Shown here one piece after another: positions 1,693 to 48,553 of a DNA stretch of 64,000 bases. The stretch is from positions 62,001 through 126,000 of the forward strand of contig NIVC01001197.1 in the NCBI GenBank assembly GCA_002269645.1, in the 5' to 3' direction. Under the pieces are notes generated by a model. That model was not told the DNA's origin. It was given only the letters and a program-made list of their open reading frames with translations, and did no database searches. The position numbers were made by a program, and so were the translations under genes. This stretch comes from Macrostomum lignano. Its lineage: Eukaryota. Position 1 is the stretch's first letter. Each line of letters begins with the position of its first letter.

Positions 1693-4600
1693 GTGTAAAT
1701 AATACGTGCGGCACGATCAGCTATGCATATTTATCGAACGTGACAGGAGTAATCGAGAGCCACAAGGGCTACAAAGCCATAACCGAATCAGAGCCGCGTA
1801 TTATGTCAATATACGCGCCCAATTTAACCTGTCTGTGGATACTGCCCAAACGCCTTGGGTTCTACATACATCTCTTTATTAAAACCTACTACCTTGCCAT
1901 GGGAGACTGCATTAAAATTGCAACAAAGCACTCTTCAAATACCAGCGAGCCTGGCAGTGATAGAGATTTGCAGTATTGCAGTAACTATTACGGATATCAC
2001 GTTCATTGGGTGACAACAGGAGACGCGCATATTTTATTTACAACTGACAATATTTATGAATCAATGGGATTTGCTATTAATTTTTACTACGAGCAAGGTT
2101 TGGTTAATTTCTCAAATTGAAGTCTATCGATAAAAAACCCAAGAAGAAACTTTTGTTCGTTTTTTTTATCATGAACATCATTTTAGCTTGTCCAAGCGTT
2201 CAGAAATGGGACTTCGACAACGGTGAAGTAGTTAGTCACACCAACGCTGGACAAACGCACTACTTAAACTCTTTAACGTGCAATTGGCAAATTTCTGTGT
2301 CGCCAGGGAAACAAATAATCGCTTGGTTTACTAGCGTCAGAATCAGTAATGGGCACGACATCGTCACATTATACGATGGTCTCAACGGTTCAACATCATT
2401 GATCACCCAATACTCGTATAATCTGTCACCAGGCTTCAGATACCAGTCCAACACAAGCAGCATGAGGTTGAGGTTCACAACAGGTACCACTGGGCATGAC
2501 TATGGCTTTCGAATGCGATACAGCATTGCTGAGAACTGTAAGTGAGAGTTCATTAGAGGACATCCATTATAGAAATAAAAAAATCAATCTTTCCCTCGGT
2601 TTCTAGTTTGCAACGGTTGGAAGATTCTGAGTGCCAGCCAAGGCGAGTTTTTCGACCACAATGACTCATCATCACCTAAATATCTGAAAGGTATGAGATG
2701 CTACTGGAGAATTATCGCGCCCATGGGATACAGAGTAGTGGCTCAGTTTAAATCATTCAGCCTCTACTACAAGGACTATGTCGCAATATATGATGGACTT
2801 CACCCAAACCGCTCACTGACAATCGCAAGTTACAACGGAAGCTTTAAATTTCAGTCTGTCAGTTCAAGAATTTTTGTTTCAAAGTCAAATGCGATGCTTG
2901 TATATTTTGGATCGAATACGGATCCAAACTTTCCAACAGACTCTGGCTTCGGGATGAAGTACAACACAACCGAAAAATGTGAGCAAATATTTTCGTTGTG
3001 ACTTAATTCGATTACGATTCGTTTTTGATTACCAAGAGCAGTCTAATCCCCAAAAAACTAATGCGTCTTAAGTTTTGGCTCAAAAAACGAAGTATAGATC
3101 TGTTAAAATTGTAAGCCGTGTTGCAATGCCAAACGATGGATACATGTACATGCACGCTTATACTGTTAAACTATTGATATAGGAATTTCAAATTCTTGGA
3201 AAGGGTTCGCTTCGCATCTTGCAGCAGCATTTTTTCTTTTAATTTACCAACAGTCTGTCAAGGCACGGAGCTCCTGACCAACGACACTGGAGAGCTGGCC
3301 AGCCATTCGTCTGCAGGCATTATGGGCTTCTTGGTCAGCTCGAACTGCTACTGGGTGATCAAAGTCTCTCCGTCAAAGCGATTGGTGGCTCACTTTACCT
3401 TTTTTAACCTTACTTCCCGCAATGAAAGCGTCACTCTGTATGACGGAGCCAATGGGTCATCTGTTCTAGCCACCCTATCGAGCAACTTCTCGGACACAAC
3501 GCGGGATTTCATAACGACAGAAAACGTCTTGACCGTGCATCTACACATTCCAGAGAGTAGCTATCGATCACTCGGAATCAAAATAAAATACGAAGCTGCT
3601 GATAACTGTGAGTATTTGTTTTACTATATTGGGTCTGCTAAAATATGTCTATTTAAACTTACATTAATGCTTTGCTACATGCTGATTAAGTTTTACTAAT
3701 TTCTTCATGTTTATTTTCTCTGTAATAGTAAGGAAGTGCTACGACGCATCATTCCTAAACAACGTTCTAAAAAATCCGCAGTGCCAGCAACAACCAGTTC
3801 AGAGCAGCCGTCTCGACCTACCACAGCACGCGCTGTTTTCAGCAGTCCAAATTCGCCATCAACTGCAAAAGTTATACCAGAAACAAGCTCTGCTCCTGAG
3901 TCGGCTACAACTGGTGGAAAACTATCCCAAACAGGTAGGAAATTCATTTCAAACAATATTTTGTTGATGTTCTCTGTAATATTGTAAGTGTTACGACGTT
4001 ACATGTATGCTCGTGTTAAATATAACTTACTTAAAACTAATGTTCTTAAAATTTCGCAGAACCGGCAACAACTAGTTCAAAGCAGACGACGCCAACTACA
4101 ACACGGGCTGTTGTCAGCAGCCCAAGTTTGCAAACAACTTCAAAAATGATACCAGAAACAAGTTCTGCTCCGGAGTCGGCAACAACTGAAAAACTGTCAC
4201 AAACGGGTAGGAGATTCATTTCAAGCAAACTTGGCTAATTATATCAAAAGAGGAAGGCGAAAATCAACATTTATAGCGACGCGTTTCGCACGTAACTGTG
4301 CATCTTCAGGCTAGGTATATTTTGAGCAAAAAAACGAGTGAGAACGGCAATAAATACAGAATTTTGGGGTTATAAATTCAATCAATATTTTATATTTATT
4401 ATTTAAAGTACATGTTTGTCCAAAAGTCGAGAGGCGAAGTCCAGGGACGGAATGGTAGTCGAAATAGTTAGAAGTATAATAGGCCTAATGTACAGCCAGT
4501 GCCCCCGGCCTTCCCTCATTTTCAGAAATATTGATTGAATTTATAACCCCAAAATTCTGTATTTATTGCCGTTCTCACTCGTTTTTTGCTCAAAATATAC

Positions 4601-5467
4601 CTAGCCTGAAGATGCACAGTTTCGTGCGAAACGCGTCGCTATAAATGTTGATTTTCGCCTTCCTATTTATCGTACTTGCCAAGCAAGCAACTTTACCAAT
4701 ATAAAAAGATTTAAACGTTTGCGTGCATAGTGTAGTAAACATTAAATTATTGAAACAATAAAACACTAAAATATATTTGATGAGTGCTATTTTCTAATAG
4801 CGCAGCTAGTAAATTTCTTTACAAAATGACACAAATCGACTCATCCATGGTTTTTTCAGAAGCCAAAGAATCTTTTCCGACTTATGTTCTCGTCTTAGCA
4901 ATCGCTGTTCCCTTGGCTGCAGTTGCAATTAATGCTGCAATTGTTGGAATTGTCATCCACAAGGTTTTATTTGCGAATTTTGAAGTAATGTTCTTTAATT
5001 TCATTTAATTAATTTAATATTTACACCATTTGAAAATATTTCAATCATTCTAGTATCTTCAGAATCTGAAGCGACTCAAAACTCCAACTTATTCTAATAC
5101 CGAGGTCTGAAATTCACGATTTTGCTGTCATGCACTCTCACACTTGCAAATGATGCTACGAGTATTTAAATTTCAATTACGTTTCTAACAAATATTTCAG
5201 GTTAGAGACGGTTCATATGCACCTGAGACAACGTCAGCTGGAGATGTAACTATCATATTTCCCGCAATATTTTACCTATAAGTAGTTTTGACTAAGTCGA
5301 CAACAGCTCCCTAAAAACTGAAATTATTATTCTTTCAGAATGAAAACGACTATTCAGTAGCCGACAAATTATACAACACTACACAGAGGAATCTCGGCGA
5401 GGACGACTACTACGACTCTATTGGCACGTTGTCGCAAGGAGACCCACAGCTCAGCACATTTAAATAA
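1693..5467 (+). CDS. CUB-repeat/mucin-stalk/TM receptor, paralog P1 (3' portion; 5' exons lie upstream of the window)
   Basis: Hand-spliced GT-AG exons. CUB: 1693-2097, 2187-2537, 2607-2978, 3254-3607 (all phase 1-1). S/T-rich: 3782-3934, 4060-4206. TM: 4860-4963 (VLVLAIAVPLAAVAINAAIVGIVIHK). Tail: 5054-5104, 5201-5245, 5339-5467 (ends DDYYDSIGTLSQGDPQLSTFK*). The frame is open throughout and colinear with P2. Confidence 0.9.
4274..4313 (-). ncRNA. Minimal type I hammerhead ribozyme motif (antisense copy)
   Basis: The minus strand reads TAGC-CTGAAGA-T-GCAC-AGTTAC-GTGC-GAAAC-GC-GTC-GCTA: CUGANGA core, 4-bp stem II, GAAA, palindromic minimal stem III, GUC cleavage triplet and a TAGC/GCTA stem I. 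Confidence 0.75.
4602..4641 (+). ncRNA. Minimal type I hammerhead ribozyme motif (sense copy, in P1 pre-mRNA)
   Basis: TAGC-CTGAAGA-T-GCAC-AGTTTC-GTGC-GAAAC-GC-GTC-GCTA; predicted cleavage after 4637. Confidence 0.75.
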
Positions 5468-9330: not shown

Positions 9331-9379
9331 GGATGGGATGTATTTCAGAGTGATGTTACGAGAACTGCTCTATCCGGCT

Positions 9380-9930
9380 CGTTCGAGCATGTGAGGACAT
9401 GGCGATCGCCTTTTGCAACAAGGCAAATATCAAAGCTCTAAAGCCGACTCCAACTCAGATTTACCAGTTCATCAACTTTCTCATGCATCATTGTCTGTCG
9501 CGACAGTCGAGTCTGCAGGCATTCATCAGCTCCAATGACTTGGGACTCGTGCACTTGGCTATTCGACGTGCGCAGCGTTTGCTGCGTGGCTGCAGCATCT
9601 GCTGTTTGCAAGGGCCCGAGTCATTTGCTGCGACTTTCTGCTGCTGCTGTGAGACCGGCCTTGGAGCTTCCCTGTGGAGCTCATCTTAGCCGGCTGCTGG
9701 GCGATGCTACTGGGGGCCAATCTTTGCGCTGTCAGCCAGGCGAACCTTAACAGGGCGATGCTGTCAACGATCGTCGCCTAGGTTTAAAGTAGCCCGGATT
9801 TGCGTTCGACTGTCCAAGACGAATCAATTCGGTGAGCGCCGTCATGCTGTTAATCTGTCCTGCATCCGCAAGAGTGCGGCTGCTCCGCTGTGTCCACTTT
9901 GTGCGCTCCAACATAATTTCAGCCGGAACT
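9380..9930 (+). mobile_element. DIRS/Ngaro-type tyrosine recombinase fragment (decayed), copy 1
   Basis: AIAFCNKANIKALKPTPTQIYQFINFL..., LWSSSxAGCWAML..., KTNQFGERR... These resemble DIRS/Ngaro YR motifs. Homologous to 31560-32130. Confidence 0.6.
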
Positions 9931-9938
9931 GACTAGAC

Positions 9939-10171
9939 CAGGGGTCGGAAACTTTTTTCTCCTAATGGCTAGATAGAGAAGGAGATTATTAAAAGAAGAA
10001 AGCTTTCAGATTTCAGACTAAACTTGAGCCGACTGGATTGCAATTAATTTAGTTAAGTTTTAATTAGGTTTTATTTTAATTTATTTTAATTAAGCTTTCA
10101 TGGACCCGAGGCCCGGATGCAGAGGTTTCTCGGGCCACATGCGGCCCGCGGGCCGGAGTTGGCCGACCCCT
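9939..10171. mobile_element. hAT (Charlie/MER5-like) MITE
   Basis: Ends CAGGGGTCGGAAACT and AGTTGGCCGACCCCT with subterminal GGCCCGCGGGCC. No intact target-site duplication found. Confidence 0.55.
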
Positions 10172-12447: not shown

Positions 12448-14388
12448 ATGGGCAGCACAACCGAGACAGTCGACACAACCAGCTCAGTTACTGAGATGCT
12501 CTCCAGTCCCAGTAGGCAGTACGAGTTCTTGTCGACTTCCACTGCTGCGCCGCAGGCAGCGCAACATGTGATAATCGGTGCGTTAGCAAAACTATTATCT
12601 GTTCTTATTAAAACCAATCACACCGTGATGTTGTACTCGTTTCAGACATCAGTGACAGATACGTGGGCATGACCATCATCATTGCCCTGCCAGTTGCCGC
12701 CTTCATTCTTCTACTGGGTGTCATTCTGCAAATTGTCTTGGTTGCTGTTGCCCTGCGCAGGGTGAGTTCTGAGACGAGGAGAGGGGCTTTAGCACCAGGG
12801 GCTTTAGCACCAGGGGCTTTAGCACCAGGGCTTTAGCACCAGGGGCTTTAGCACCAGGGGCTTTAGCACCAGGGGCTTTAGCACCAGGGGCTTTAGCACC
12901 AGGGGCTTTAGCACCAGGGGCTTTAGCACCAGGGGCTTTAGCACCAGGGGCTTTAGCACCAGGGGCTTTAGCACCAGGGGCGCCAGCACCAGGGGCGCCA
13001 GCACCAGGGGCGCCAGCACCAGGGGCGCCAGTACTAGGGGCGCCAGCATTTGAGCACTGTCATTTGAACACTGTCAACAAATTTCAGCCTGGTGTCAGAC
13101 TACGAGTAGCAAATGGTAAATGAGAACTCAGCTCTCATATCATATCTTTGTACCAACAAAAACGTCCCACGGAGCTCTTGAAACTGTAACTTGGCTTACA
13201 AAGAAATTTCCTTGAAGCTGTTAAGCATCATAGAAATTCGCTCTACACCTTTTTAGCAGTGTAGAAGTTCTAGTGCTGAAACAAATAAACACGGATCTGG
13301 GTTGTAAAGTTAAGATAAGAATCCGTTTTCCATTCAACACGCAGATCAACAGCATTGCAAGGTTGCTGTTGAAGCGGCCCGATCAGAGCTCGAGTTCAGA
13401 CTGGCTCACCAAGGAACCCGAAGCCCATTTCCAGGTCACCGGTGACGTAAGCTGGATTGCGAGCTCAATTTGCTTCAGTTTAATAATAATTATAGTATTT
13501 ATTGAGAAAAAATCAAGAAAATCTCAAGACCCTGTTTGAATTTTCTATATTTTCAGCTATGGCAAAAGGGGAAATTCAAATTGAGCACTTTACTACCACC
13601 TGAGACGCTCCCTATGAGCTCTAGACCAGCTGTTGAATTCCCTCTATGAGCACTTGAACACGTGAGAACTTGAACACGTGAGAAATCCCCTATGAGCACT
13701 TGAACACGTGAGAAATCCTCTCTGAGCATTTTAACACCTGAGAAGTTCTCTCTTAGCATCTGAAAATCTGGATCATAAATTTCATTCGAGCACATAAACT
13801 AGAGTACATGTATCAGGTCATTCAGGTGATGAACTCAACATCTGCCTTCAGACTGAACGCAAAAACATGTAAATATTTGCCAACGTTCCCTAGGCTGCAG
13901 CAACTCCGCTTCCAAGACGCCCCGAGGATCATCATACTGAGGTAGGAACTGGTATCAGTAAATTAAAACAAATGGAAATTTGTGAGTAGTTTGTTTAACA
14001 GCAAACAACTTTTACTGTTTCGTGAAAAGGCCTCTACTGTCGCCAAGAAGCCAGGTGAAAGGTCACGAATTTCGTTTTTTACTGATGGAAAGTCATCTGA
14101 TTATCTTGAGGTTGGTTCCCAACTTGTTTGTAACCCGGTATTGACCAGTTTACGATGCAAAAGTTGATGAAATTTTGTAACCGTTGACCAACCCACAGGA
14201 ACCTAAGAGATCAGTACGAGTCTCTTGTGCGGTAATTTGTCCAAAAATATTTTCCCTGGATTTCGATACTAATTGGTATCTTACTGAGGTGTTCAAATTA
14301 ATTCTCACCTTTCATGTTTCTTTAATTATTTCAGGCTTATGAAGACACAGTATACACTATGGCCGATGTCAACGAAATAACACATTAA
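12448..14388 (+). CDS. Small single-pass TM protein without signal peptide (about 115 aa; S/T-rich N-terminus, TM, Tyr-containing tail)
   Basis: Exons 12448-12577, 12646-12761, 13894-13941 and 14335-14388 join in frame with canonical splice sites: MGSTTETVDTTSSVTEM...II|DISDRYVGMTIIIALPVAAFILLLGVILQIVLVAVALRR|AAATPLPRRPEDHHTE|AYEDTVYTMADVNEITH*. The start codon is uncertain and an upstream exon is possible. Confidence 0.65.
12783..13049. repeat. 15-bp minisatellite (GGGGCTTTAGCACCA / GGGGCGCCAGCACCA) in an intron of the small TM gene
   Basis: About 18 directly visible tandem units; CTTT-type first, then CGCC-type. Confidence 0.95.
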
Positions 14389-14885: not shown

Positions 14886-16456
14886 ACAGCAACAGGGGCT
14901 TTAGCACCAGGGGTTTTAGCACCAGGGGTTTTAGCACCAGGGGCTTTAGCACCAGGGGCGCCAGCACCAGGGGTTTTAGCACCAGGGGCGCCAGCACCAG
15001 GGGCGCCAGCACCAGGGGCGCCAGCACTAGGGGCGCCAGCACCAGGGGCGCCAGCACCAGGGGCGCCAGCACCAGGGGCGCCAGCACCAGGGGCGCCAGC
15101 ACCAGGGGCGCCAGCACCAGGGGCGCCAGCACCAGGGGCGCCAGCACCAGGGGCGCCAGCACCAGGGGCGCCAGCACCAGGGGCGCCAGCACCAGGGGCG
15201 CCAGCACCAGGGGCGCCAGCACCAGGGGCGCCAGCACCAGGGGCGCCAGCACCAGGGGTTTTAGCACCAGGGGTTTTAGCACCAGGGGCGCCAGCACCAG
15301 GGGCGCCAGCACCAGGGGCGCCAGCAACAGGGGCTTTAGCACCAGGGGTTTTAGCACCAGGGGCTTTAGCACCAGGGGCGCCAGCACCAGGGGTTTTAGC
15401 ACCAGGGGCGCCAGCACCAGGGGCACCAGCACCAGGGGCGCCAGCACCAGGGGCGCCAGCACCAGGGGCGCCAGCACCAGGGGCGCCAGCACCAGGGGTT
15501 TTAGCACCAGGGGTTTTAGCACCAGGGGCGCCAGCACCAGGGGCGCCAGCACCAGGGGCGCCAGCACCAGGGGCGCCAGCACCAGGGGCGCCAGCACCAG
15601 GGGTTTTAGCACCAGGGGTTTTAGCACCAGGGGCGCCAGCACCAGGGGCGCCAGCACCAGGGTCGCCAGCACCAGGGGCGCCAGCACTAGGGGCGCCAGC
15701 ACCAGGGCGCCAGCACCAGGGGCGCCAGCACCAGGGGCGCCAGCACCAGGGGCGCCAGCACCAGGGGCGCCAGCACCAGGGGCGCCAGCACCAGGGGCGC
15801 CAGCACCAGGGGCGCCAGCACCAGGGGCGCCAGCACCAGGGGCGCCAGCACCAGGGGCGCCAGCACCAGGGGCGCCAGCACCAGGGGCGCCAGCACCAGG
15901 GGCACCAGCACCAGGGGCGCCAGCACCAGGGGTTTTAGCACCAGGGGTTTTAGCACCAGGGGCGCCAGCACCAGGGGCGCCAGCACCAGGGGCGCCAGCA
16001 CCAGGGGCGCCAGCACCAGGGGCGCCAGCACCAGGGGCGCCAGCACCAGGGGCGCCAGCACCAGGGGCGCCAGCACCAGGGGCACCAGCACCAGGGGCGC
16101 CAGCACCAGGGGCGCCAGCACCAGGGGCGCCAGCACCAGGGGCGCCAGCACCAGGGGTTTTAGCACCAGGGGTTTTAGCACCAGGGGCGCCAGCACCAGG
16201 GGCGCCAGCACCAGGGGCGCCAGCACCAGGGGCGCCAGCACCAGGGGCGCCAGCACCAGGGGCGCCAGCACCAGGGGCGCCAGCACCAGGGGCGCCAGCA
16301 CCAGGGGCGCCAGCACCAGGGGCGCCAGCACCAGGGGCGCCAGCACCAGGGGCGCCAGCACCAGGGGCGCCAGCACCAGGGGCGCCAGCACCAGGGGCGC
16401 CAGCACCAGGGGCGCCAGCACCAGGGGCGCCCGCACCAGGGCGCCAGCACCAGGGG
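14886..16456. repeat. Large 15-bp minisatellite (about 105 units), same family
   Basis: AGCACCAGGGG followed by CGCC, TTTT or CTTT. One 14-bp unit near 15705 shifts the phase. Confidence 0.97.
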
Positions 16457-17044
16457 CTATAGTGTAATGCGAGCAAAATTTGTTAGACAATTTGCTTGTA
16501 TTCTCCTAATATTCCGACTCTGTGACAGTGACGTGTGACCGTATATAGTTCTATCACGAATATAAAAAAATGCTCAATACTACTGTCGATGGAGCACTGC
16601 CAGTGTGAGGCACGGGGAAAATCAAGTTAATTGTCCACCGGGTTGTTATAATTTTTCTTCTAGAACTTAGTAGGATCGCAAAAGCAAAGTAACAAAACAC
16701 TCTTCCGAGCAAAAGGAAGTAAAATAGAGCATCCCAATAATTCTGTTTGAACGCTGCTCCGGAAACCCAAACAGCCCTTCGATTTATCAGATAGCGCAGC
16801 GCACTATCACAGCACAGTTTAAACAGATGCATTTAACAGAAAAGGATTCAATGCGTCTGATAATTAATTCAAATTACGTAAATGCATGAGCTTAAAATAC
16901 TGTGTTGTTTGACATTGTCATACTTACTAAAGTTGAATTAGTTTCCGGCAAAAACTTCAACCTGGCTATATTGATTGTACTGCCAAGTGCGTCGATCATT
17001 TTGATTCTGAGAATCTGGTTGATTCTGATTAGTTAATTACATAT

Positions 17045-17099
17045 TTTTATTGTATTTATTTATTTATTTATTTAGTTAGTTAGTTAGTTATTTAATTAA

Positions 17100-17162
<63 letters not shown>

Positions 17163-23800: not shown

Positions 23801-26128
23801 CCCGGCTCTCGCCCCCTGCTCTCTTTCTATCCTCTAACCCTTCGCATGCTTAAGTTAGTGAAAGGAAAATGAAATATTTATTAGAAATATAGAAGCGAAA
23901 CGAAGTCAGCTATCCCGGTAAGACAAAGCGTTATGCTCTTCGTTTATTTTTCTATCTCCTTCTAAATTCTTTCTTCCCCTCACAGTCTTCACTCGAGCAT
24001 GCGAAGCGTCTGTAGCCTCCACAAAAGTGTCCAGCTCTCTGGTGCTGCTGAGTGGTAGCCTTATCATTCGCACCTCCCTCTTGTCGTAGGGCTGGACGAG
24101 TTTCAGTAGGCTTTCTGTACGACTCAGAGGGTCTTCGCTCTCACACCTAGGCAGAAAGACCCCCTGGGCAGTCCAGTACCCCAACCCAGATCATCCCGTG
24201 TGCTGTCCGCACAGACGGAAGCGGGAAAATACAACACAATTTTAATATAGATTGTACGTTTACTGATTCAGTTCAAAGATGACATGCTTTGTAAAATTAC
24301 TTCAGTTTGCGAAAGCTACAAGCTGATAACCGATGGCAGTGGTGAGATCAGCAGCCACCAAGGCGCAGGTGCATTGCCTTACATAAGAGGAATGTCATGC
24401 AAATGGCAGTTTGTCGGTAAACCTGGAATTCAAATCTCAGCTAACTTGATCTACTTGAACTTGACGTCCAACTCTGACTCTATTGCTTTGTACGAAGGGT
24501 CAGACGACACTGAGTTAGTCACAATTCAAGGTGGCGCCTCCACATGGTCTACAAAGTTTTTGACTGTGTCAAACATCTTGACAGTGGTTTTCACCACTGG
24601 AAATGCTGCTGTAAGTAGTAGCAAAGGACTTGGTTTTCGGTTGCAGTACAGCGTTGGTAATAGTGTTGGTGCGTTAAAATGTTTTGCGTAATGTTCTCTG
24701 AGATATGGTGAGTGCTACGATGCATTATTCAATCGTAACTAATGCTCCTGAAATAAATGTATCCGCAGAACCAGCAACAACCAGTTCAAAACAGACTTCA
24801 TCAAGCACTGCACGCGCTGTTGTCAGCAGTCCAAGTTCGCCAGCAACTGCAAAAATCGTATCAGATAACAGCTCTGCTTTGGAGTCGACAACAACTGGTA
24901 AACTGTCACAAACTGGTAGGCAATTCATTTCAAACAATTTCCGTTTACGTTCTCTGCAATACGGTAAGTGTCACGACGTGTTACTTGTAGCTAATGTTCT
25001 TAAAATATCCACAGAACCAGCAACAACTAGTTCGAAACAGACTTCATCAAGCACAGCGCGCACTGTTGTCAGAAGCTCAAGTTCGCCGGCAACTACAAAA
25101 ATCGTATCAGATACCAGCTCTGCTCCGGAGTCGACAACAACTGGCAAACGGTCACAAACGGGTAGGAAATTACTTTTAAATATTCTTTTTGTTTAAGTTC
25201 TTTTCAAGATGGTGAGCGTTACAATGTATTACCCGCAACAAATGTTATTGACATATCTGAAGAACCGACAGCAACCAGTTCAAAGCAGACGTCAGCAACC
25301 ACAGCGCGCGCTGTTGTCAGCAGCCCAAGTTCGCCAGCAACTGCAAAAATTGTATCAGATACCAGCTCTGCTCCGGAGTCGGCAGCAACTGGCGAACTGT
25401 CACAAACGGGTGGGAGATTCATTTCAAACAAAATCCGTTAAAGTGAAAAGATTTTAATGTTTGCGTACATGCACACTCCTACATAGGGTTTTTATTTGTT
25501 GGTAAATATCTTTGCAAAATGACACAAATCGATTCATTCCTGATTTTTCAGAACCTACAGAATCTCTTCCGACTTATATTATCGCCTTAGCAATCGCTGT
25601 TCCCTCGGGTGCGATTGCATTTACTGCTGCAATAGTTGGAATTGTCATCCACAAGGTTTTGAGAAATTATGAAGTGATGCTTTAAGTTCATTAGTAAATC
25701 AATTTTTTGCACCATCTGACATTGTATATTGATCGTTTCAGTATCTTCAGAACCTGAAGCGACCTAAAACTCACACAAATTCTTATACTGAGGTAAGAAC
25801 CTTGCAATGATTTCGGCTGTCGTGCATTCCCGCACTTCACTAAAATATCCTAAAAGAAACTACTTGAATTTCGTTTATCTTTAACAAAAATTGCAGGGCA
25901 GCGCCGGTCCATATGCACCTGGGACAACGTCAGCGGAAGATGTAACTATCATAAAAATATTTCCTACATATTTTGTCATCTCGACCACGGCTTTCAGTAA
26001 AATCCTAAATATCATTCCTTCAGATTAAAGAGGACTACTATCTGGAAGCTGACAACGCTGCACAGAAGAATCCCGATGAGGACGACTACTACGACTATAT
26101 TGGCATGAATCCGCAAAGAGACCCATAG
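17879..26128 (+). CDS. CUB-repeat/mucin-stalk/TM receptor, paralog P2 (complete, about 1348 aa)
   Basis: Signal exon 17879-17954 (MILWQLGFVACALLIFLPKCGCQTA). Nine phase 1-1 CUB exons: 18181-18543, 18858-19229, 19578-19925, 20389-20736, 21549-21935, 22020-22373, 22447-22797, 23056-23406, 24306-24656. Mucin exons 24769-24915, 25015-25161, 25263-25409. TM 25552-25655. Tail 25742-25792, 25897-25941, 26024-26128 (ends DEDDYYDYIGMNPQRDP*). Total 4047 nt with an open frame. Confidence 0.9.
18589..18745. mobile_element. hAT MITE in P2 intron 2
   Basis: TIRs CAGTGGCGTAG / CTACGCCCCTG with an exact 8-bp TSD ATCATAAT (18581-18588 and 18746-18753). Confidence 0.9.
24700..25430 (+). repeat. Tandem exon-plus-intron triplication (about 247-bp period) encoding the mucin stalk
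   Basis: Three 147-bp exons (EPATTSSKQT...SQTG) with homologous intron segments. P1 has two such units (3782-4206). Confidence 0.9.
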
Positions 26129-27588: not shown

Positions 27589-29123
27589 ATGACAATGATC
27601 GGTCGTATTAGTCAGCACCTTACGTTTTTGTTACTACTACTATTGGCAATTGGTGAGTTTTCTTGGCATTTTGTCTATAATATATTTTTGGATGAACTTT
27701 TAAATTGGTCAAGCATTTAGCATTTTACATGTAGCTACAGCTAGTATATGAAGATCGGTTACATGCATATTGAGATTTTACCAGAGGATTCTTTTAGCGA
27801 TTAGACAAACCATGAGATAACGAATTTTAAAATGATAGCAGAATTTTTGTTTGGTTTTACATAAAACTACCGGATTCAGGTTGCGCTGCTGTCACCAAAA
27901 AGAAGGGAGCAGACTGCAAAGCGAACACCTGCAAAAACGGCGGTACCTGCAACACATTCACGCCCAGTCCGCTGTGTATCTGCGTGCTGCCTTACATTGC
28001 GCCGAACTGCGCTACCGCCGCTGACTACTGCAAAACCCTGCAACCTGACAAGAACATCACAGCGCTGCCTGTGTGCCAAAATGGAGGCGCCTGCACCATG
28101 ACTTACACTGATCCGTTCTTTAATTGTACCTGTCCGCCTGAGTTTTACGGTGAACATTCGGATTTTCAAGTACTGTGTTAAATTGCATACCTATCTACAA
28201 TATGAGCTACGTAACTTTATTGAGGTGCAATCAAAACTCGCGGTTCTAGCGAAAGATTCGTTATTAGAAATATCTAGACTATAAATGAATTCAGCAGGTC
28301 CTTATCTTTTTTTCTTACAGGAATTCGATGTCAATTTAGAGTGACCTCCGTTGCTCCAACAACGATGGAAAGAACAACGGATACTTACGGAGGCGCCACC
28401 AGCTCCAGATACTCTGACGGAATCAACGCAACGCTGATGCCGAGTACCAAAAGTCCAGGTAAGAATTATGCTAGAAATCTGCATCTTTTGAGAAACTGCT
28501 GCGATCATGAATGGCCGCATCTGTTCTACTTTTAGACCCAGTCGACTCAAATCCGTTCGACAGCCTACTGGTGAAGTCCCTTGCCATTGGGATTCCATCC
28601 GCGATCGTTCTAGCACTGATCATTGCTGGCGTTGTTGCTCTGATTGTGAAATGCCGCAACTGCGGAAAGGTAAAATTACGCAAGTAACACGTCGAAATGG
28701 AATTCGTTTAAGCACCAACATGAACTTTCTCTTCAAAATGCATTGGTAGGATAGGCATTCTTCAGTTTTAGCTACAGCACTTATTTGTGAAGTATTTCCC
28801 TAGCTACTAGTATCTGCTCTCCAGAAGATCATTTGAAGAGCTCATACATGTATGCACTAGTTAGTACGCTATCTTTCCCTTAACAGTTAAAGTAACAATT
28901 CATATGGTTCTGGGGTTGATTTACTAAGCGAACTTTTATCAGTAAGTTTAAAATTTAAGCATTTATAGTGTATATTTTCATTTTTAGTATATTGGATAGA
29001 TATTTTACTCAAATATTTCTAAGGTGACATTTAATAGGGAAAATTTTAAAATTATTGATTATTTAATAACAGCTTCCCTTCAATCTAATCTGATTTCAGG
29101 GCTCCGGAAGCAGATACGTTTAA
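27589..29123 (+). CDS. Signal peptide-2xEGF-mucin-TM protein with a very short tail (209 aa)
   Basis: Exons 27589-27652, 27880-28149, 28321-28458, 28536-28669 and 29100-29123 (630 nt). EGF1 is CKANTCKNGGTCNTFTPSPLCICVLPYIAPNC. EGF2 is completed across a phase-1 intron (CTCPPEFYG|IRC). TM is LAIGIPSAIVLALIIAGVVALIV and the tail KCRNCGK|GSGSRYV*. Confidence 0.88.
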
Positions 29124-32130: not shown

Positions 32131-32671
32131 AGACCAGGGGTCGCAAAATGTTCTAGAGAATCTAGTGTATAACTGAGGAGGGTAGAGGAGAAAAGAGGAG
32201 GGGAGAGAATGGAGAGGAGAGAGAAGAGAGAATGGAGAGGAGAGGAGAGAAAATCTGCAAGAGACTTCACAATTGATACGCTTCTGTCCCAGAGATATAG
32301 CCTCGATTAGTTGCTCTAACTAACCACAAAATCTTTTGAGGCTGCTCCGAGTCTGAGGTTTCGGCTCGGATTTTACGCTTATATTTATAGTCGAAATTTT
32401 GGCATATACTTAGTAGCGCGACTCATATTTCATCAGATTTCAACTTATTTCATCATATTTCACCATAGTTGCAACATATTTCACCATAGTTGCAACTTGT
32501 CTCATGCTTCGTGGTACGTTGTATTCACAGTCTTAAAATGGAGCATGACAATTTGCAATTTTTATAACATTCAGGTTTTTCGCATTTTTGTGTTACTACT
32601 TACAGTAGTCTACTTGTATTGTTTCTGGAGATCTCTACACTGGTTACCGAACTAGCAAGCAGATCAGCAAG

Positions 32672-33025
32672 ATGTGCGGCCTGAGCAAGGGATATACAAA
32701 CCACTGCATCCGCGTCACTCGCATTGCTGATCTGAAAGAGTCAGGCTATTCTGTGTCTGCCATCATGAGCATTACTGGCCAACAAACGGAGTCTACTGTG
32801 CGGCGGTATCTCTCCCGGATGCGTGACAGCGCCATTCGAGACATGGCAACTACTGTGGATGCTACGTTAGAACTACGCGGTGTGAATGCCGACAGCAGCG
32901 GTACCTGCGTCTCGACTAGCAGCAAAAGCATCATCAGCCACGAGACAGCAACTGTTCGTGAGGATACCAATGCTGCAGTGTTCTCCAACTGCCAGTTCGC
33001 AAATTGCACGATCAATATCAATTAG
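32672..33025 (+). mobile_element. Crypton-type (DUF3504-like) tyrosine recombinase C-terminal fragment
   Basis: YTNHCIRVT (HxxR), ITGQ (ITGH-like, degenerate), STVRRY (catalytic Tyr) and a terminal FANCTININ typical of DUF3504/Crypton proteins. Confidence 0.7.
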
Positions 33026-34989: not shown

Positions 34990-37900
34990 ATGACACTTTG
35001 GCAGCTTGGCTTCGTTGCTTGTGCCTTGTTCATCTTTCTGCCAATGTGCAGCAGTCAAACTGTCTGTAAGTTACTCATGTTCTCTGCTGATAACTCGCAT
35101 TTTATAACAAAAATTTTCTTCGCTTTCACTTCTGCATTTTCATCACCGTGGTTAATCTACTTTAGCTCTTGAAAGTTGCCTTAAGGCTACTCATAAAGAG
35201 TTAGCTCACTAGGGGAGAAAGAGAAAGAGACAGAAAGAGATAGAGAGAAATAACGTCTAGTGTCAAACGCTTGAACTCCCACTTCCAGACCGCAAGTCTG
35301 AGCACAGAATTTGGGAACAGAGTTGTCTCATCTTTATCGGGCAGATTCTTAGAGCTGGTCTCGTTAACGTCGCTTCCTCCGAAGTTTCTTGAATCCTGAA
35401 GTCGGCTCGGTATGAGGGCACTTTAGTGAACGTAATAACTTAATTATCGACGTCACTGTATTTTTCGAGATAATTATTTAGAATCAGAGATGCGCCCTAA
35501 TAATAAAATGAGTTCTATAACAGTGACAAGGTCCTCCAGAAGGGCGTCTTCTTAAAGAAATACCAGAATCGGAGTCGTGTATCCCTATCTGTTACTCAAG
35601 GGTACCAAAAGTCAAAGTAGTAGGCATGATGACAGTTCTGGCACAAAATTGTCAAAATCCCCTTTAGATCAACATCTACTAAGATGTATTGACACATAAT
35701 GCGCTTACTTCTAAAATCAGCTGTCACCATGCAATGATGCAATACCTACAACCACTCATCTAAGGGGGATAAAAAAAGTCAACCACCCCCCATCCATAAA
35801 ACAACCTAATCCCACCTAGATAGACATCTACTAAGATCTACTCAGACACAATGCGCTTACAGTTATAATCAGCTATCACAATGCAATACCTACACCTGTT
35901 AATCTAAGGCAAAAATGAACAACAACCCAAATTAAAAAACATTCACATCCCAAGACCCAACACTACATGCCTACACCACCCTTAGACTTAAAATAATTTC
36001 TTTGTAACTCTTTCTGGTTTTAGTCATTGCATATAAAAAAGTCATGCACAGCTCTCCACAGATGTCACTGTTAAGATCTTGAAGTATAAAGTCTGAGCGG
36101 TAAATTTTTTGCCCTTTTAGAATAGTAGTATTTATGTTGGTGGAGTAATTGGCGGCTATAATCCCCTAGTTCCACCAGTGAACGAGCCGAGCCCGGCGCC
36201 GCCGAAGGCGGCGTCGGGCGAGAGCGAGAGAACCCGAGGCCCCGCCAGGGGCCGAGGGCGAGTGAATAATTTCTACCCATGGCGGCCGAAGGCCGACATG
36301 GGCTAGAAAGTATTTACGAGTAAATAAGTTAGACTCTAATGCATTTTGAAATTTCACGTTTTTTCGCCAAAAAATGCTCCTGTTTTGCAACCACTGCACC
36401 GATTGAGTTGAGTGAGGTGTCGATCGATAGAAAACTTTTAAATCTATCGAATGAATATACTTTTAAGTGCAGAGATTTTATTACTAAGCCGTAAATTAAG
36501 TGGAAAGACAATTTTTTCAAAAGTGCTTCTGGGAGATCTCAAAATTCTGGTACACCTTACGAGATACGGCTTCGACATCTAAGGATCAAAGTTGTAAAAC
36601 TAAATTTCCTACAAAATGGTACATGGCACTTTAATTTATTTCGGCGTCTTTATGCAGTTTTGGTGGGTTTTTTGGGTAAAAAAATGACCTTCATTTTATT
36701 ATTTCGCCAATTTTTCCTACGAAGCTTTTTGAGTTTGGGCTTCAAAGCAGTGCAGTTGGATGCGCAATGCAAAAATCTACAAGTGTCTAAAGTTTTGTTT
36801 CCCTACGATTCTGCAGTGCTGAGAAAATCGACAAAAATTGATTTTTCAAAAAATCACATGACTTTCGCATTATTGCTCATTATAATTTTGAGAACATGGT
36901 GCGAATAAGCCAATATCGAATTTCTATAGCATAGTTGCTGTACTATATTGGTGTAAATTGCTGCCGTCTGCTTTCGCTGCTTTCGGATTGAAAAATCGAT
37001 CAGAAATCGATAATTTGTGATTTTTGGCTGATTGGGTGCCAGAAAAATGGGTGATTAAAATTTTAAAAGAATGCTAGATCAAATGCGGATACTGCAACGA
37101 GTTGTACTAATGTCTGGCTAAAATTGACCAAGTTTTTGAGTGTCTGCAACAAGTGCTCATGTGTCAAAAGTGATTGGAAATCGATCAGAGTAGTGATTTT
37201 TTAATATTTTGCTTGAAATCAGGCAAAATAACGCAATAGAACGACAATATTTTTATGAAATCTGATTTCCCACATAATGAGGCATATTTGCGTGCAATTT
37301 CTAGAGATTCAGTTCATTGGGTAAAAAATTATTGATAAAAAACTGAAAAATTGATCTTATTACTCTTATGTTAGTTTCGGGGATATTTAAACTGGAAATG
37401 GTAGGAATTTCGTACTGAAACCAATGCACAGTGTTCCATATAGGTAATTTAACAAATTTCTTGAATTTCATAACCATTCCATGTTTTTTTCATGTAAAAA
37501 ATGCCTTTTTTGCATCGAAATTCATCACATTAAGCTGCATATACCGCTTTGCATAATATGCATTTGCATGTGATTGCTTGCATGGCTTTGGCATTGGGCT
37601 GAGTTAAGCTGGTTAGAAAGGAAGGAAAGGAAAGGAAAGGAAGGAATAATCGTACATACAATGTACACACCCATCCCTTCCAAGTGGGGTTGTGGCAACG
37701 CGAGAGGGCTTGGCGGCTTGGTTTGGAGGGCGTGTAATAGAGCTTCATTTGACTCGCACACAGACCAAGGGAAATTAGATCGATAAACGGGCGTCACGTG
37801 ATTAGAATTTCGTATTAAATTTAGCTCTTTAACTGCACATTTGAATTGCAAGCCCAGTACAAAGTTTGTCGGGCGCAAGATCCAAGTCACTACGTGTACA

Positions 37901-40136
37901 ATCCTCCCCCGACTAAAAAGTCAGGCGATACGGCTTCTGAAGTAGGTATGTACAGTGTTTTGGAAAGACTTTATTTATAGCTTTCTTTGCAAAATATAAC
38001 CCTGCTACGCTCTGGAGTCATTAGAAATTTTTTTATATCGAGGCCTTCTAAAGCCTATTATAGAAGACTCGATTCCAGCTCATGGCTGCGGGTCAGATGA
38101 GAGAGAAAGAGAATAGAGAAGAGATAAGACTAAAGAGAAGATAAGAGATAAAACGAGAGCTAGAAGCGAGAGGAGAGGAGAGGGGAGACTAGAGAGAGAT
38201 TAGAGTGGAGAGAAACAGAACAGACAAAGAGAGAAAATGGGAGAAGTAGAGATTTACATTTTTATTGAGCTTCTCAAAGTTCTTTTTCATCGGTACAAAA
38301 CTAGGTTTATCAAGTAGTATGAAGACCCACGTCTAAAAAGAAGCCCGTTCACTGGTGGCAAAAAGACGTGTGCGTCTTCATACTACTTGTTTTAGTTAGC
38401 ATATTGAAATATATTTCCATACCTTTTCTTGCATATAGTGGGAAAGTAAAGTCTTAGACACTGTCTGGTTTTGGGCACAGTCTGGTTTTCGAGTGAGAGA
38501 GGGCAGAAGAGCAGAGAGAAGTTCGCCCAACCTTCAAGTTTACCCAAGGCCGCAGCCAGTATCAAAATCTGCACACTGCCTAATATGGCGAGTGCACTTC
38601 TCGCCTCCGAACCTTCTTGCTCTGTACCTAGAGAAAATCTCTTTCCTCACCTCGTGTTCCTCGAGAGGGTCGCCCACAGACCGGGGCCGCCATTCTATGC
38701 TCCTTGCTTCAAGTTGCAAATCTTTTCAAATTGTACACTCAGCTATATCGATTATTTTTCTTAACTCCCCGCATGCTTGACTCCAAGATTGTATGCACAG
38801 CTTAGAATTTTCTGGAATTTTCGACTGCTAGCTGTATTTAAAGCCACACTACTAGAAGTTAAGTCAAGCACAATATAATTTTTAAGGTATGGCAAGGGAT
38901 TAGCTTGTCAGCTGCAGATAATAAGATATTTGTCTTTGACGACAATACTAAAAGTCTACCCTTTGGTCATTCCCTTACTGCCAGTTTATGTTGTACCAAT
39001 ATTGACAGTATTGCATAGATATTGCCGTGACATTTTATGTTTCAGCTACATTGTAACTGTGTGACTTGTGACTGTCATCATGCCTACTACTAGTCAATCA
39101 AATTAATCCACCTATACTAATTCTCTATAATAGTCTAAGAGCATCGGAATCGGTCCAAACGGATCCTGTCCAATCCCTAAGATTAGGATTAGGATTTAGA
39201 TAGGGAGGCCTTTAATTCATTAAATCAACAGAAATCAACAGATTAATCACGGCCGGTAATGTCTTAGCTCTCATTAATCAAATAACTGTGACTTCAACAA
39301 ACTCTGATCTATGCACTTCTCTCAGAGATGTAGCTTCGTAGTTTTTGATAAGTCTTGAATTCTCCTAAGGCTGCTCCGAATCTGGGATTTCAGCTCGGAT
39401 TATGGACTTATATTTCTACGCAATTTTAAGACGGTTTTGGCCTAAACTGAGGCTAGGTTTTATGAGTTTACGAAAGGAATTTTATCATTGGACAGATAGG
39501 GTTTTTGAATAGAAAGGGTGAGACTAAGGTCATTTTTAGGTTAAAATTTACCATTATTTAAAATTCTAAAATTTAAGGTTGAAAACCCGTTTTTCGCACA
39601 ATGGGATGGTCACTGACTATTTTTGTGATATTACAAAAAAATGAGGGATGTTGTACGCGTATGAATTAAAAATTTGTATTTGACATATTTTCATCTCACT
39701 ACTTCTAGTAGTCTCAATTAAGTAGTATCAATAAGACATAATTCCTTCACTAACCGGACCAACCATTGCGCAGACTGCAGCGGCGGGCTCCAGCGGCTGC
39801 CAGCTGAGGCCGGTGGCGAAATCGCCAGCCACAGCGGAGTCGGCACAACAAACTACAGCAGCAACTCGCAGTGCTACTGGCAGCTCGATGCGCCGCCTGG
39901 CAAAAGAGTCGTAGTACGGTTCACCTACATGGATCTCGAGTCACCAAGCGACAGAGTGACTCTGTACGACGGCCTGACAACGTCATCCGAAATTGCAGTC
40001 GTTAGCGCGAATGACTCAGCTGGCTACGAGTCGCCGAAGTTCGTTTCGTCCGCAAACACTCTGACAGTGAATTTTTATTCGAACAGCCAATTCGCCAGAA
40101 AAGGATTTCGTTTAGAGTACAACGCCACCGTATCCG
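34990..40136 (+). CDS. CUB receptor paralog P3: signal exon and first CUB exon only in this window
   Basis: Exon 34990-35065 (MTLWQLGFVACALFIFLPMCSSQTV) and a 363-bp exon 39774-40136 nearly identical to P2 18181-18543. Intron 1 is about 4.7 kb (226 bp in P2). No further CUB exon was seen up to 64000. Confidence 0.8.
36160..36320. repeat. GC-rich multi-hairpin element, probably a non-autonomous transposon end
   Basis: Stems CGCCGCC-GAA-GGCGGCG and CCCATG..GGCC-GAA-GGCC..CATGGG in AT-rich surroundings. Family not identified. Confidence 0.5.

Positions 40137-48488: not shown

Positions 48489-48553
<65 letters not shown>

What the first reader, a model, noticed from the sequence alone, without database searches (positions are those of the whole stretch)
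1693..40136. Tandem cluster of structurally variable CUB-array receptors alternating with small TM genes: candidate invertebrate recognition or immune-receptor locus
Seen: the order is CUB receptor P1, small TM gene, CUB receptor P2, EGF-TM gene, CUB receptor P3, all on the + strand. The receptors have a signal peptide, up to 9 CUB exons, a mucin stalk, a TM and an acidic Tyr-rich tail with no enzymatic domain. Established: clustered, diversified ectodomain receptors with Tyr-signalling tails are how invertebrate recognition loci are built (e.g. Ig-type Alr genes in Hydractinia, sea urchin SRCR families). Inference: this may be an analogous system built from CUB domains alone. I do not recognise a named family with this architecture; cubilin, neuropilin, CSMD and tolloid all carry other domains.
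Basis: partly seen in the sequence, partly recalled or inferred. Interest (0 to 1): 0.82.

Follow-up and report, generated by a model that had tools for sequence, protein, structure and literature searches.

The report
Flatworm tandem cluster of CUB-array membrane proteins
This is a real tandem cluster of fast-evolving, Macrostomum-specific cell-surface proteins built from strings of CUB domains, but nothing here shows that it is an immune or self-recognition locus.

Summary
The window is Macrostomum lignano (free-living flatworm) DNA. The core observation holds. The + strand carries 14 one-domain CUB exons in three gene copies. P2 (17879-26128) is complete: signal peptide, 9 CUB domains, three Ser/Thr-rich stalk exons, one TM helix and a 66-aa acidic, Tyr-rich tail. 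P1 (1693-5467) is only the 3' part of a gene: 4 CUBs, 2 stalk exons, TM and tail. A retroelement fragment lies directly upstream of it. P3 is only a signal exon plus one CUB exon, followed by more than 10 kb of repeats. The EGF-TM gene is real and its position is conserved in paralogous loci. The "small TM gene" has no support. The family has close relatives only in M. lignano, as uncharacterised "CUB domain-containing proteins". Paralogs differ at dN/dS of about 0.5 (about 1 in CUB6 and CUB7), and one homologous copy is a frameshifted pseudogene. CUB-only single-pass proteins with Tyr-bearing tails exist elsewhere (human CDCP1; sea urchin, krill and mussel proteins), so the architecture is not unprecedented. 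The immune or allorecognition reading is neither refuted nor positively supported. It is most likely a ligand-binding surface glycoprotein family with Tyr-motif signalling or sorting.

The parts
1..1634 (+). Retroelement fragment. The integrase ORF is at 1-1122 and the element's 3' part follows. It abuts the first in-window P1 exon.
   Evidence: Pfam Integrase_H2C2 3.5e-15 and rve 1.2e-12. Similarity of P1 to P2 begins only at 1634.
1693..5467 (+). P1, the 3' portion of a CUB-array gene, 702 aa. CUB exons: 1693-2097, 2187-2537, 2607-2978, 3254-3607 (homologs of P2 CUB5-8; no CUB9). Stalk exons: 3782-3934, 4060-4206. TM exon: 4860-4963. Tail exons: 5054-5104, 5201-5245, 5339-5467.
   Evidence: Model with AG/GT at every junction. 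73-77% nt identity to P2. Matches UniProt A0A1I8GDA1 apart from model differences. The ORF is intact although random substitution at 8-10% leaves 0 of 4000 copies stop-free.
12612..12833 (+). Not supported as a gene.
   Evidence: The ORF runs into the minisatellite at 12782-13040. No protein match in the database. No similarity to the EGF-TM gene.
14887..16457 (.). 15-bp minisatellite, 105 copies, 1.4 kb upstream of P2. Shorter arrays lie at 12782-13026 and 30026-30171.
   Evidence: TRF. It is translated as 'STRGA' repeats in the database model A0A1I8G0Q1.
17879..17954 (+). P2 exon 1: start codon and signal peptide MILWQLGFVACALLIFLPKCGCQ.
   Evidence: Model. The same junction (..QTA|YCS..) appears in the database model P0164. 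79% aa identity to the P3 signal exon.
18181..24656 (+). P2 CUB exons 1-9, one domain per exon, phase 1-1: 18181-18543, 18858-19229, 19578-19925, 20389-20736, 21549-21935, 22020-22373, 22447-22797, 23056-23406, 24306-24656.
   Evidence: Own HMM. Splice sites. Pfam finds 9 CUB stretches, E=1e-88. The domains are 20-38% identical to each other, in a 2-Cys type and a 4-Cys type (CUB2 and CUB5).
24769..25409 (+). P2 stalk: three 147-nt phase 1-1 exons (24769-24915, 25015-25161, 25263-25409) encoding a 147-aa segment that is 48% Ser+Thr.
   Evidence: 248-bp tandem repeat. Model. Composition.
25552..26128 (+). P2 TM exon (25552-25655) and three tail exons (25742-25792, 25897-25941, 26024-26128 including the stop codon). 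The tail reads KYLQNLKR..GPYAP..EDYYLE..DEDDYYDYIGM.
   Evidence: Model. Tail alignment with P1 and L001 shows the invariant residues KYLQNLKR, YAP, AD, YDxI and DP.
27589..28669 (+). EGF-TM gene: signal exon 27589-27652, two-EGF exon 27880-28149, Ser/Thr exon 28321-28458, TM exon 28536-28669. The last short exon was not mapped.
   Evidence: tblastn with PAA91831.1 gives 95-98% identity over the mapped exons, apart from the read-through ends of one HSP. Pfam EGF 2.3e-8. Exon boundaries. The same gene follows the CUB gene in L002 and, decayed, in L001.
34990..35065 (+). P3 signal-peptide exon (MTLWQLGFVACALFIFLPMCSSQ), GTAAGT donor.
39774..40136 (+). P3 CUB1 exon: 91% nt and 93% aa identity to P2 CUB1. 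It is the last CUB in the window.
   Evidence: Collinearity with L002 stops at 40325, which is 184 bp before the point where CUB2 lies in L002.
41035..50507 (.). Three tandem copies of a roughly 3-kb CT-rich repeat that follow the P3 fragment.
   Evidence: Self-BLAST and TRF. The same repeat family fills a 13-kb intron of the paralog in L001.

Best explanation
The locus is a young tandem duplication of a Macrostomum-specific family of type-I membrane glycoproteins. Each full-length member is exported by a signal peptide. It displays a rod of 8-9 N-glycosylated CUB domains on an O-glycosylated mucin-like stalk. It spans the membrane once and ends in a 66-77-aa acidic tail without any enzymatic domain.

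Inferred mechanism: the CUB array binds extracellular protein or glycan ligands. The tail couples binding to the cell interior through its conserved tyrosines (G-P/S-Y-A-P, and an acidic E-D/F-D/E-Y-Y-D-x-I motif that reads YxxI and, in two copies, YxxM). These act either as phosphotyrosine docking sites or as YxxPhi endocytic sorting signals.

The one-domain-per-exon, phase 1-1 gene structure lets CUB and stalk exons be gained or lost in frame. Tandem duplication, pseudogenisation and repeat insertion then produce copies of different length. The gene structure and architecture are shown. Surface location, ligand binding and tail function are inferred.
For: - Architecture and gene models. P2 carries 21 N-glycosylation sequons in the ectodomain and a stalk that is 48% Ser+Thr.
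- Coding constraint: dN/dS is 0.5 between paralogs at dS 0.31-0.38. P1 keeps an open frame over 699 codons although 0 of 4000 randomly mutated copies stay stop-free.
- Tail: four tyrosine positions and the motifs KYLQNLKR, YAP and YDxI are invariant in P1, P2 and the L001 paralog.
- In-frame exon gain or loss: P1 lacks CUB9 and one stalk exon, and L001 has 2 stalk exons.
- The CUB domains are canonical. A profile of the nine domains hits cubilin CUB5-8 at 1.2e-39, followed by enteropeptidase, PCPE-1, neuropilins and MASPs.
- Database gene models of paralogs use the same exon junctions.
Against: - No transcript, protein, localisation or ligand evidence could be reached.
- The database models are predictions and are fragmentary or fused (P0004, P0010).
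- The tail evolves about as fast as the ectodomain (dN/dS 0.45-0.85), which is unusual for a conserved signalling module.
- The acidic triad of Ca2+-binding CUB domains is incomplete in all nine P2 domains. Only the central Asp is invariant (the rule for the triad is my own knowledge), so cubilin-like ligand capture is doubtful.
- The P2 homolog in L002 is a pseudogene and P3 is truncated in the window, so single copies are dispensable.
Confidence: 0.6

Rival explanations
1. One reading: the cluster is a non-self, pathogen or allorecognition receptor locus. Diversified CUB ectodomains recognise variable ligands, and the Tyr tail signals through kinases, as an ITAM or hemITAM does.
For: - The family is lineage-restricted, with no cross-phylum ortholog.
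- It is tandemly duplicated, with gain, loss and pseudogenes.
- dN/dS is about 1 in CUB6 and CUB7 in all three paralog pairs.
- Divergence between the window and the collinear locus L002 is 3.5-16% and mosaic. Genome-wide divergence between M. lignano subgenome copies is about 2.2% (PMC10733133).
- The tail has an acidic stretch before YxxI, which resembles a hemITAM (the resemblance is from my own knowledge).
Against: - Overall dN/dS is 0.5, and no domain is clearly above 1.
- In the more divergent 5' half, exons are still more conserved than the surrounding DNA (dN 0.03-0.06 against about 11% overall divergence). This points to older or converted sequence rather than diversifying selection.
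- Only about 8-11 distinct copies were seen, not a large repertoire.
- M. lignano is solitary, and no allorecognition is known for it (own knowledge).
- No infection, expression or polymorphism data exist.
Confidence: 0.12
2. Reproductive surface proteins. The family acts at sperm, egg or female-tract surfaces and evolves fast under sexual selection and conflict in this reciprocally mating hermaphrodite.
For: - The family is fast-evolving, genus-restricted and tandemly duplicated.
- Reproduction-related genes evolve faster in Macrostomum (title and abstract of PMC8662610, listed).
- CUB-only proteins such as spermadhesins act in fertilisation. They appear among the PDB matches of the domain profile, for example 1spp and 1sfp.
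Against: There is no expression evidence of any kind. Spermadhesins are small secreted proteins, not TM arrays. The PDB matches to them are the weakest in the list.
Confidence: 0.15
3. Endocytic or scavenger uptake receptor. This would be a membrane-anchored functional analogue of cubilin-amnionless, in which the CUB array captures ligands and the YxxPhi motif in the tail drives clathrin-mediated internalisation in gut, epidermis or protonephridia.
For: - The best solved-structure match of the domain profile is cubilin CUB5-8 (1.2e-39).
- YDYI/YIGM-type YxxPhi motifs sit in an acidic context and are conserved in the paralogs.
- The tail is short and has no catalytic domain.
Against: - The Ca2+-binding acidic triad that cubilin uses for ligand binding is incomplete in every domain.
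- There is no EGF region and no cubilin orthology; identity to cubilin-like proteins is 26-30%.
- Nutrient receptors are usually conserved, single-copy genes, unlike this family.
Confidence: 0.15
4. The cluster is mostly dead DNA: partial duplicates and pseudogenes left by segmental duplication and transposon activity, with gene models that only look intact.
For: - P3 is reduced to two exons in the window, and P1 has no visible 5' end.
- The P2 homolog in L002 has 1-nt and 13-nt frameshifting deletions. The 13-nt deletion is visible in the independently annotated protein P0164.
- The region is full of retroelement, minisatellite and CT-rich repeat sequence.
Against: - P2 is open through all 17 exons with canonical splice sites.
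- P1 is open through 699 codons at about 20% divergence, which random mutation never preserves (0 of 4000).
- dN/dS is well below 1 for most exons.
- The L002 homolog of P3 is annotated as a 1216-aa protein.
Confidence: 0.05

Closest known systems
Human CDCP1 (CUB domain-containing protein 1, Trask)
   Same: Type-I membrane glycoprotein. The ectodomain is made only of CUB-type domains, and the non-catalytic tail works through tyrosines phosphorylated by Src-family kinases (own knowledge). It is the nearest named analogue of the architecture and of the proposed mode of action.
   Different: There is no detectable homology. P2 gives no hit to Pfam's CDCP1-specific CUB models at E<=0.01, whereas sea urchin and mussel CUB-TM proteins do. 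No CDCP1 chain appears among the PDB matches. This family has 9 canonical CUBs plus a mucin stalk, and its tail is shorter and unrelated.
Uncharacterised invertebrate CUB-only TM proteins: Lytechinus variegatus 'cubilin-like' XP_041484739.1, Meganyctiphanes norvegica CAL4115917.1, Potamilus streckersoni KAK3588078.1
   Same: They have an array of 5-8 Pfam CUB domains, one TM helix near the C-terminus and a 50-78-aa tail with Tyr motifs. So the architecture class recurs across phyla.
   Different: They are only 24-34% identical in the CUB region. Their tails are unrelated, no mucin stalk repeat is evident, and they are not orthologs. Their functions are also unknown.
Cubilin
   Same: Long arrays of canonical CUB domains. 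It is the best solved-structure match of the domain profile (3KQ4, 1.2e-39).
   Different: Cubilin has 8 EGF and 27 CUB domains and no TM segment, and it relies on amnionless for anchoring and endocytosis (own knowledge). The proteins here have their own TM and tail, no EGF in the same protein, and an incomplete Ca2+-site triad.
CUB-TM auxiliary subunits of ion channels (C. elegans SOL-1 and LEV-10; NETO1/2)
   Same: Single-pass proteins whose ectodomain is dominated by CUB domains. NETO2 appears among the PDB matches (7f56, 7.5e-9).
   Different: They have 2-5 CUBs, usually with an LDLa module, are conserved across phyla, and are neither clustered nor fast-evolving (own knowledge). No LDLa is present here.
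Invertebrate recognition clusters (Hydractinia Alr, Botryllus FuHC/fester, sea urchin SRCR families)
   Same: Clustered, lineage-specific, duplicated single-pass receptors with modular one-domain exons and gain or loss of copies.
   Different: Those are built from Ig, EGF, sushi or SRCR domains, not CUB. They are defined by extreme polymorphism or very large repertoires and by a demonstrated phenotype. None of this was shown here.

Membership tests
CUB domain superfamily (Pfam PF00431) | Sequence match to the CUB profile above the gathering score | tested here: met
   Nine stretches in P2, 293 bits against a cut-off of 21.4. Single exons also match. The domain profile hits solved CUB structures.
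CUB domain superfamily (Pfam PF00431) | Ca2+-binding subtype: Glu/Asp/Asp triad in the loops (own knowledge of the rule) | tested here: not met
   Only the central Asp is invariant. No P2 domain shows all three acidic residues. Seven of the nine domains lack the second disulfide loop.
CDCP1 | Homology of the ectodomain to CDCP1 CUB domains (Pfam CDCP1_CUB models) | tested here: not met
   No CDCP1_CUB family is listed for P2 or P0003 at E<=0.01 or 0.001. The sea urchin and mussel proteins score 132.7 and 48.6 bits.
CDCP1 | CUB-only ectodomain, single TM and a non-catalytic Tyr-bearing tail | tested here: met
   Architecture of P2. This is resemblance in kind only.
CDCP1 | Tail tyrosines phosphorylated by Src-family kinases | not testable with these tools
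   Needs phosphoproteomics or kinase assays.
Cubilin | N-terminal EGF repeats followed by 27 CUBs, with no TM segment | tested here: not met
   P2 has a signal peptide, 9 CUBs, its own TM and no EGF. Cubilins are 26-30% identical hits only.
NETO / LEV-10 / SOL-1 channel auxiliary proteins | CUB domains with an LDLa module (NETO, LEV-10) and cross-phylum orthology | tested here: not met
   No LDLa. No relative above 50% identity outside M. lignano.
Invertebrate allorecognition or immune receptor loci | Clustered, lineage-specific paralogs with gain and loss | tested here: met
   Tandem P1, P2 and P3. Paralogous loci L001 and L002 include a pseudogene. Genus-restricted.
Invertebrate allorecognition or immune receptor loci | Diversifying selection on ligand-binding domains | tested here: inconclusive
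   Pairwise NG86 dN/dS is 0.50-0.56 overall and 0.59-1.02 for CUB6 and CUB7. Pairwise averages over three or four sequences cannot detect site-specific selection.
Invertebrate allorecognition or immune receptor loci | High allelic polymorphism, and a recognition or infection phenotype | not testable with these tools
   No population or expression data are reachable. The divergence between the window and L002 cannot be assigned to alleles, subgenome copies or older paralogs.

The most novel reading that the evidence does not exclude
The cluster is a hyperdivergent recognition locus of a flatworm, for pathogen, gamete or self/non-self recognition, built from CUB domains alone.

On this reading the copies in the three subgenomes are kept unusually different: 3.5-16% divergence against a genome average of about 2.2%. 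Paralogs exchange segments. The membrane-proximal CUB6 and CUB7 evolve near neutrality or under diversifying selection. The acidic YxxI tail works as a hemITAM-like signalling motif.
Probability: 0.12. Interest if true: 0.75.

Novelty: new member of a known kind. Interest (0 to 1): 0.3.

Why it matters
If the proteins are expressed as modelled, they are a genus-specific family of large surface glycoproteins in a transgenic, regeneration-competent model flatworm. They would be a convenient case of in-frame exon-level domain gain and loss.

They also belong to a little-noticed class of CUB-only single-pass receptors that recurs in sea urchins, crustaceans and molluscs, and none of those has a known ligand. 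As it stands, the finding corrects several fragmentary or fused database gene models. It does not open a new question in immunity.

Tried and rejected
- Spliced P2 could not be handed to the exhaustive HMMER search or to the contig look-up because it is not a literal window translation. The paralog P0003 was used instead.
- I tried to retrieve the 1216-aa homolog of P3 by querying with its CUB1-2 sequence. It was not returned. Only five further N-terminal M. lignano fragments came back, so the full downstream structure of that gene remains unseen.
- A chimeric query of P2 TM+tail plus the two candidate 'small TM' ORFs found nothing. There is therefore no evidence for the small TM gene, and none for other proteins sharing the tail.
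- Three literature searches for this family in Macrostomum or flatworms found nothing relevant. The whole-word 'CUB' hits were Current Biology DOIs.
- I considered that P1 is a dead partial duplicate and rejected it, because its open frame cannot be explained neutrally.
- I considered that the array arose by recent internal duplication and rejected it. The nine CUBs are only 20-38% identical to each other, so the array is old and only the gene copies are young.
- The tRNA scan was empty.
- I did not run structure prediction. The Pfam and PDB profile matches already settle the fold, and a model would not discriminate between the functional hypotheses.

Full report
ORGANISM AND SETTING

The window is eukaryotic and rich in repeats. 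A spliced protein from the finding matches only Macrostomum lignano proteins closely. UniProt A0A1I8G0Q1 (P0004) is 100% identical to window P2 over 205 aa, and A0A1I8GDA1 (P0007) corresponds to window P1. So the window is M. lignano DNA. In that genome about 85% of the sequence is present in three subgenome copies, which differ by about 2.2% overall and about 1.1% in coding sequence (PMC10733133). This matters when counting 'paralogs'.

WHAT IS THERE

A profile made from the window's own CUB-like ORFs finds 14 CUB exons. All are on the + strand and none lies elsewhere in the window. Four are at 1650-3696, nine at 18162-24688 and one at 39722-40138. Pfam confirms CUB for the single exons.

I built P2 independently from splice sites. 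It has 17 exons at 17879..26128, all AG/GT, and every CUB and stalk exon is phase 1-1. It contains:
- a signal peptide (MILWQLGFVACALLIFLPKCGCQ);
- nine CUB domains (Pfam: 9 stretches, E=1e-88, no other domain);
- three 49-aa stalk exons that are 48% Ser+Thr;
- one TM helix;
- a 66-aa tail with 8 Tyr and 13 Asp/Glu.

The ectodomain has 21 N-glycosylation sequons. The nine CUBs are only 20-38% identical to each other. They fall into a 2-Cys type and a 4-Cys type (CUB2 and CUB5). So the array is old and only the gene copies are young.

P1 (1693-5467) has ten exons and gives 702 aa. It is the paralog of P2 from CUB5 onward, at 73-77% nucleotide identity. It lacks CUB9 and has two stalk exons. Its upstream end coincides with a retroelement fragment (integrase ORF at 1-1122), and similarity to P2 starts only at 1634. 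No signal exon is visible. P1 is nevertheless open through 699 codons. Random substitution at 8-10% per site left 0 of 4000 simulated copies stop-free. I therefore infer that P1 is a functional gene whose 5' exons lie beyond the window, with a retroelement in the intron.

P3 is a signal exon (34990-35065) plus a CUB1 exon (39774-40136; 93% aa identity to P2 CUB1). No other CUB is found up to 64000, even at tblastn E=10. Three tandem CT-rich units of about 3 kb follow it, at 41035-50507.

BETWEEN THE RECEPTORS

The EGF-TM gene is real. Its mapped exons are a signal exon at 27589-27652, a two-EGF exon at 27880-28149, a Ser/Thr exon at 28321-28458 and a TM exon at 28536-28669. It is 95-98% identical over these exons (apart from the read-through ends of one HSP) to M. 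lignano PAA91831.1, an 'EGF-like domain-containing protein'.

The 'small TM gene' between P1 and P2 is not supported. The hydrophobic ORF at 12612-12833 runs straight into a 15-bp minisatellite. It has no signal peptide, no similarity to the EGF-TM gene and no counterpart in L001-L003. It has no match among 5.8 billion proteins.

RELATED LOCI

L002 (NIVC01000070.1) is collinear with window 17029-40325, covering P2, the EGF-TM gene and P3.
- Identity is 96.5% over 21387-28842 but only 84-89% over 17029-20815.
- Its P2 homolog keeps all 17 exons and splice sites but carries a 1-nt deletion in CUB1 and a 13-nt deletion in CUB2. The 13-nt deletion's frameshift is visible in the independently annotated UniProt fragment P0164. 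No gene is called there. It is a pseudogene.
- The homolog of P3 is annotated as a 1216-aa CUB protein. Its CUB2 lies 184 bp beyond the point where the window's homology breaks off, at 40325.

L001 (NIVC01002128.1) carries an older paralog, P0003, with CUB4-9, two stalk exons, a TM and a tail; the locus lies near the end of its contig and the model is annotated as partial. A 13-kb intron in it is filled with the same CT-rich repeat family. A decayed EGF-TM remnant lies downstream.

L003 holds a distant M. lignano paralog (29% identity) with about 11 CUB exons, a Ser/Thr segment, a TM and an unrelated tail.

The unit 'CUB gene followed by EGF-TM gene' is therefore ancestral. Copies have been duplicated, truncated and inactivated.

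EVOLUTIONARY RATES (NG86)

Between the paralogs P1, P2 and L001:
- dS is 0.31-0.38;
- dN/dS over the CUBs is 0.50-0.56;
- CUB6 and CUB7 reach 0.59-1.02 in all three pairs;
- CUB5 and CUB8 are at 0.24-0.50;
- the stalk is at 0.27-0.46;
- TM plus tail is at 0.51-0.85.

Between P2 and its L002 homolog, dS is 0.058 and dN/dS 0.35. The CUB3 and CUB4 exons (dS 0.07-0.14) are older than CUB5-9 (dS 0.03-0.06). This fits a recombination or gene-conversion breakpoint in the CUB4/CUB5 intron, the same intron where P1's homology ends. In the divergent half, exons are still more conserved than the surrounding DNA, so this is not evidence for diversifying selection.

DISTRIBUTION

An exhaustive HMMER search of 1.84 billion representatives with P0003 found relatives above 50% identity only in M. 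lignano. The next tier, at 26-32% identity, consists of CUB arrays of Aureivirga bacteria, a choanoflagellate, metagenomes and, at 26-30% identity, sea urchin cubilins. There is no cross-phylum ortholog.

I saw roughly 8-11 distinct family sequences: P1, P2, P3, L001, the two L002 genes, and P0001/2, P0161, P0063 and P0163. In a tripled genome this is a small family.

Among the 150 best hits, a few other animals have CUB-only arrays with a C-terminal TM and a short Tyr-bearing tail: Lytechinus variegatus XP_041484739.1, krill CAL4115917.1 and mussel KAK3588078.1. The architecture class is therefore not unique.

HOW IT MOST LIKELY WORKS

Shown: these are secretory-pathway type-I proteins with a long glycosylated CUB rod on a mucin stalk and a short non-catalytic tail.

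The tail alignment of P1, P2 and L001 keeps these elements invariant:
- KYLQNLKR at the membrane;
- G-(P/S)-Y-A-P-x-T-x-S-A;
- a Tyr before a conserved A-D;
- E-(D/F)-(D/E)-(Y)-Y-D-x-I, followed by D-P.

The last motif reads YxxI in all three copies and additionally YxxM in P2 and L001.

Inferred: the ectodomain binds extracellular ligands, and the tail recruits either SH2-type adaptors after phosphorylation or AP-2 for endocytosis. I cannot tell which.

The domain profile is closest to cubilin CUB5-8 (1.2e-39), followed by enteropeptidase, PCPE-1, neuropilins and MASPs. However, the Glu/Asp/Asp Ca2+ triad used by those ligand-binding CUBs is incomplete in all nine domains, and only the central Asp is invariant (the rule itself is my own knowledge). 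Cubilin-style binding is therefore doubtful.

COMPARISON WITH KNOWN FAMILIES

The nearest named analogue in kind is CDCP1: a CUB-only ectodomain, a TM and a Tyr-phosphorylated tail (own knowledge). P2 does not match Pfam's CDCP1-specific CUB models, although the sea urchin and mussel proteins do. It is therefore an analogue, not a member.

Cubilin, NETO, LEV-10 and SOL-1 fail on architecture or orthology (see the membership table). Recognition clusters such as Hydractinia Alr share only the genomic style.

VERDICT

The exceptions are the small TM gene and the completeness of P1 and P3.

The immune or recognition interpretation survives its own refutation test, because there is no conserved ortholog and evolution is not slow. 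But it has no positive evidence. A generic 'fast-evolving surface receptor or adhesion glycoprotein family' is the best-supported statement.

The family is already in the databases as uncharacterised, partly mis-modelled 'CUB domain-containing proteins'. Interest is moderate to low unless expression or polymorphism data point to recognition.

Noticed in passing
window 12782-13040, 14887-16457, 30026-30171; L001 32007-32502: A 15-bp minisatellite (consensus about CAGCACCAGGGGCGC, up to 105 copies) recurs in the intergenic stretches of the cluster and of its paralogous loci. In UniProt A0A1I8G0Q1 it is translated as a long 'STRGA/QHQGR' N-terminus fused to P2 exons, which is a gene-model artefact.
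   Followed up: partly
window 55158-58404 versus 59161-62409: A 3.2-kb inverted repeat with 99.9% identical arms, separated by about 750 bp. It carries 21-bp tandem repeats and long ORFs without Pfam hits. It is either a transposon with very long terminal inverted repeats or a palindromic long-read assembly artefact.
   Followed up: partly
window 41035-50507; L001 12376-25222: A CT-rich repeat family of about 3 kb is present as three tandem units after the P3 fragment. The same family fills a 13-kb intron (between CUB7 and CUB8) of the paralog in L001. It appears to insert repeatedly into introns of this gene family.
   Followed up: partly
L002 1208-1569 and 1726-2084: The P2 homolog in NIVC01000070.1 has a 1-nt and a 13-nt deletion in CUB1 and CUB2 but keeps all 17 exons and splice sites, so it is a young pseudogene. 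The 13-nt deletion's frameshift is seen in UniProt fragment A0A1I8GL86.
   Followed up: yes
window 17029-40325 versus L002: Identity to the collinear locus is mosaic: 96.5% over CUB5 to the EGF-TM gene, and 84-91% on both sides. This is well above the roughly 2.2% divergence reported between M. lignano subgenome copies. Either these are older duplicates, or paralogs exchange segments. A breakpoint lies in the CUB4/CUB5 intron, where P1's homology also ends.
   Followed up: partly
L001 30373-30704: There is a decayed copy of the EGF-TM gene downstream of the CUB gene. It has a stop codon in the second EGF, its Ser/Thr exon is missing, and its TM segment is still recognisable.
   Followed up: yes
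window 9389-9951 and 31595-32147; 32609-33022 (+): A repeated element occurs in both intergenic intervals. The ORF at 32609-33022 gives a weak, sub-threshold Pfam hit to the tyrosine-recombinase (Phage_integrase) family. This may be remains of a Crypton- or DIRS-like transposon.
   Followed up: no
proteins P0155, P0134, P0149: Sea urchin, krill and freshwater mussel each have an uncharacterised protein with 5-8 CUB domains, one C-terminal TM and a 50-78-aa tail with Tyr motifs. Two of them match Pfam's CDCP1 CUB model. This is a recurrent, unstudied class of invertebrate CUB-only receptors.
   Followed up: partly
proteins P0009, P0011: After the Macrostomum family, the best-scoring relatives of the flatworm CUB array in 1.84 billion proteins are giant CUB-domain proteins (2494-3405 aa) of the flavobacterium Aureivirga sp. 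CE67. It is unusual for a domain regarded as mainly metazoan.
   Followed up: no
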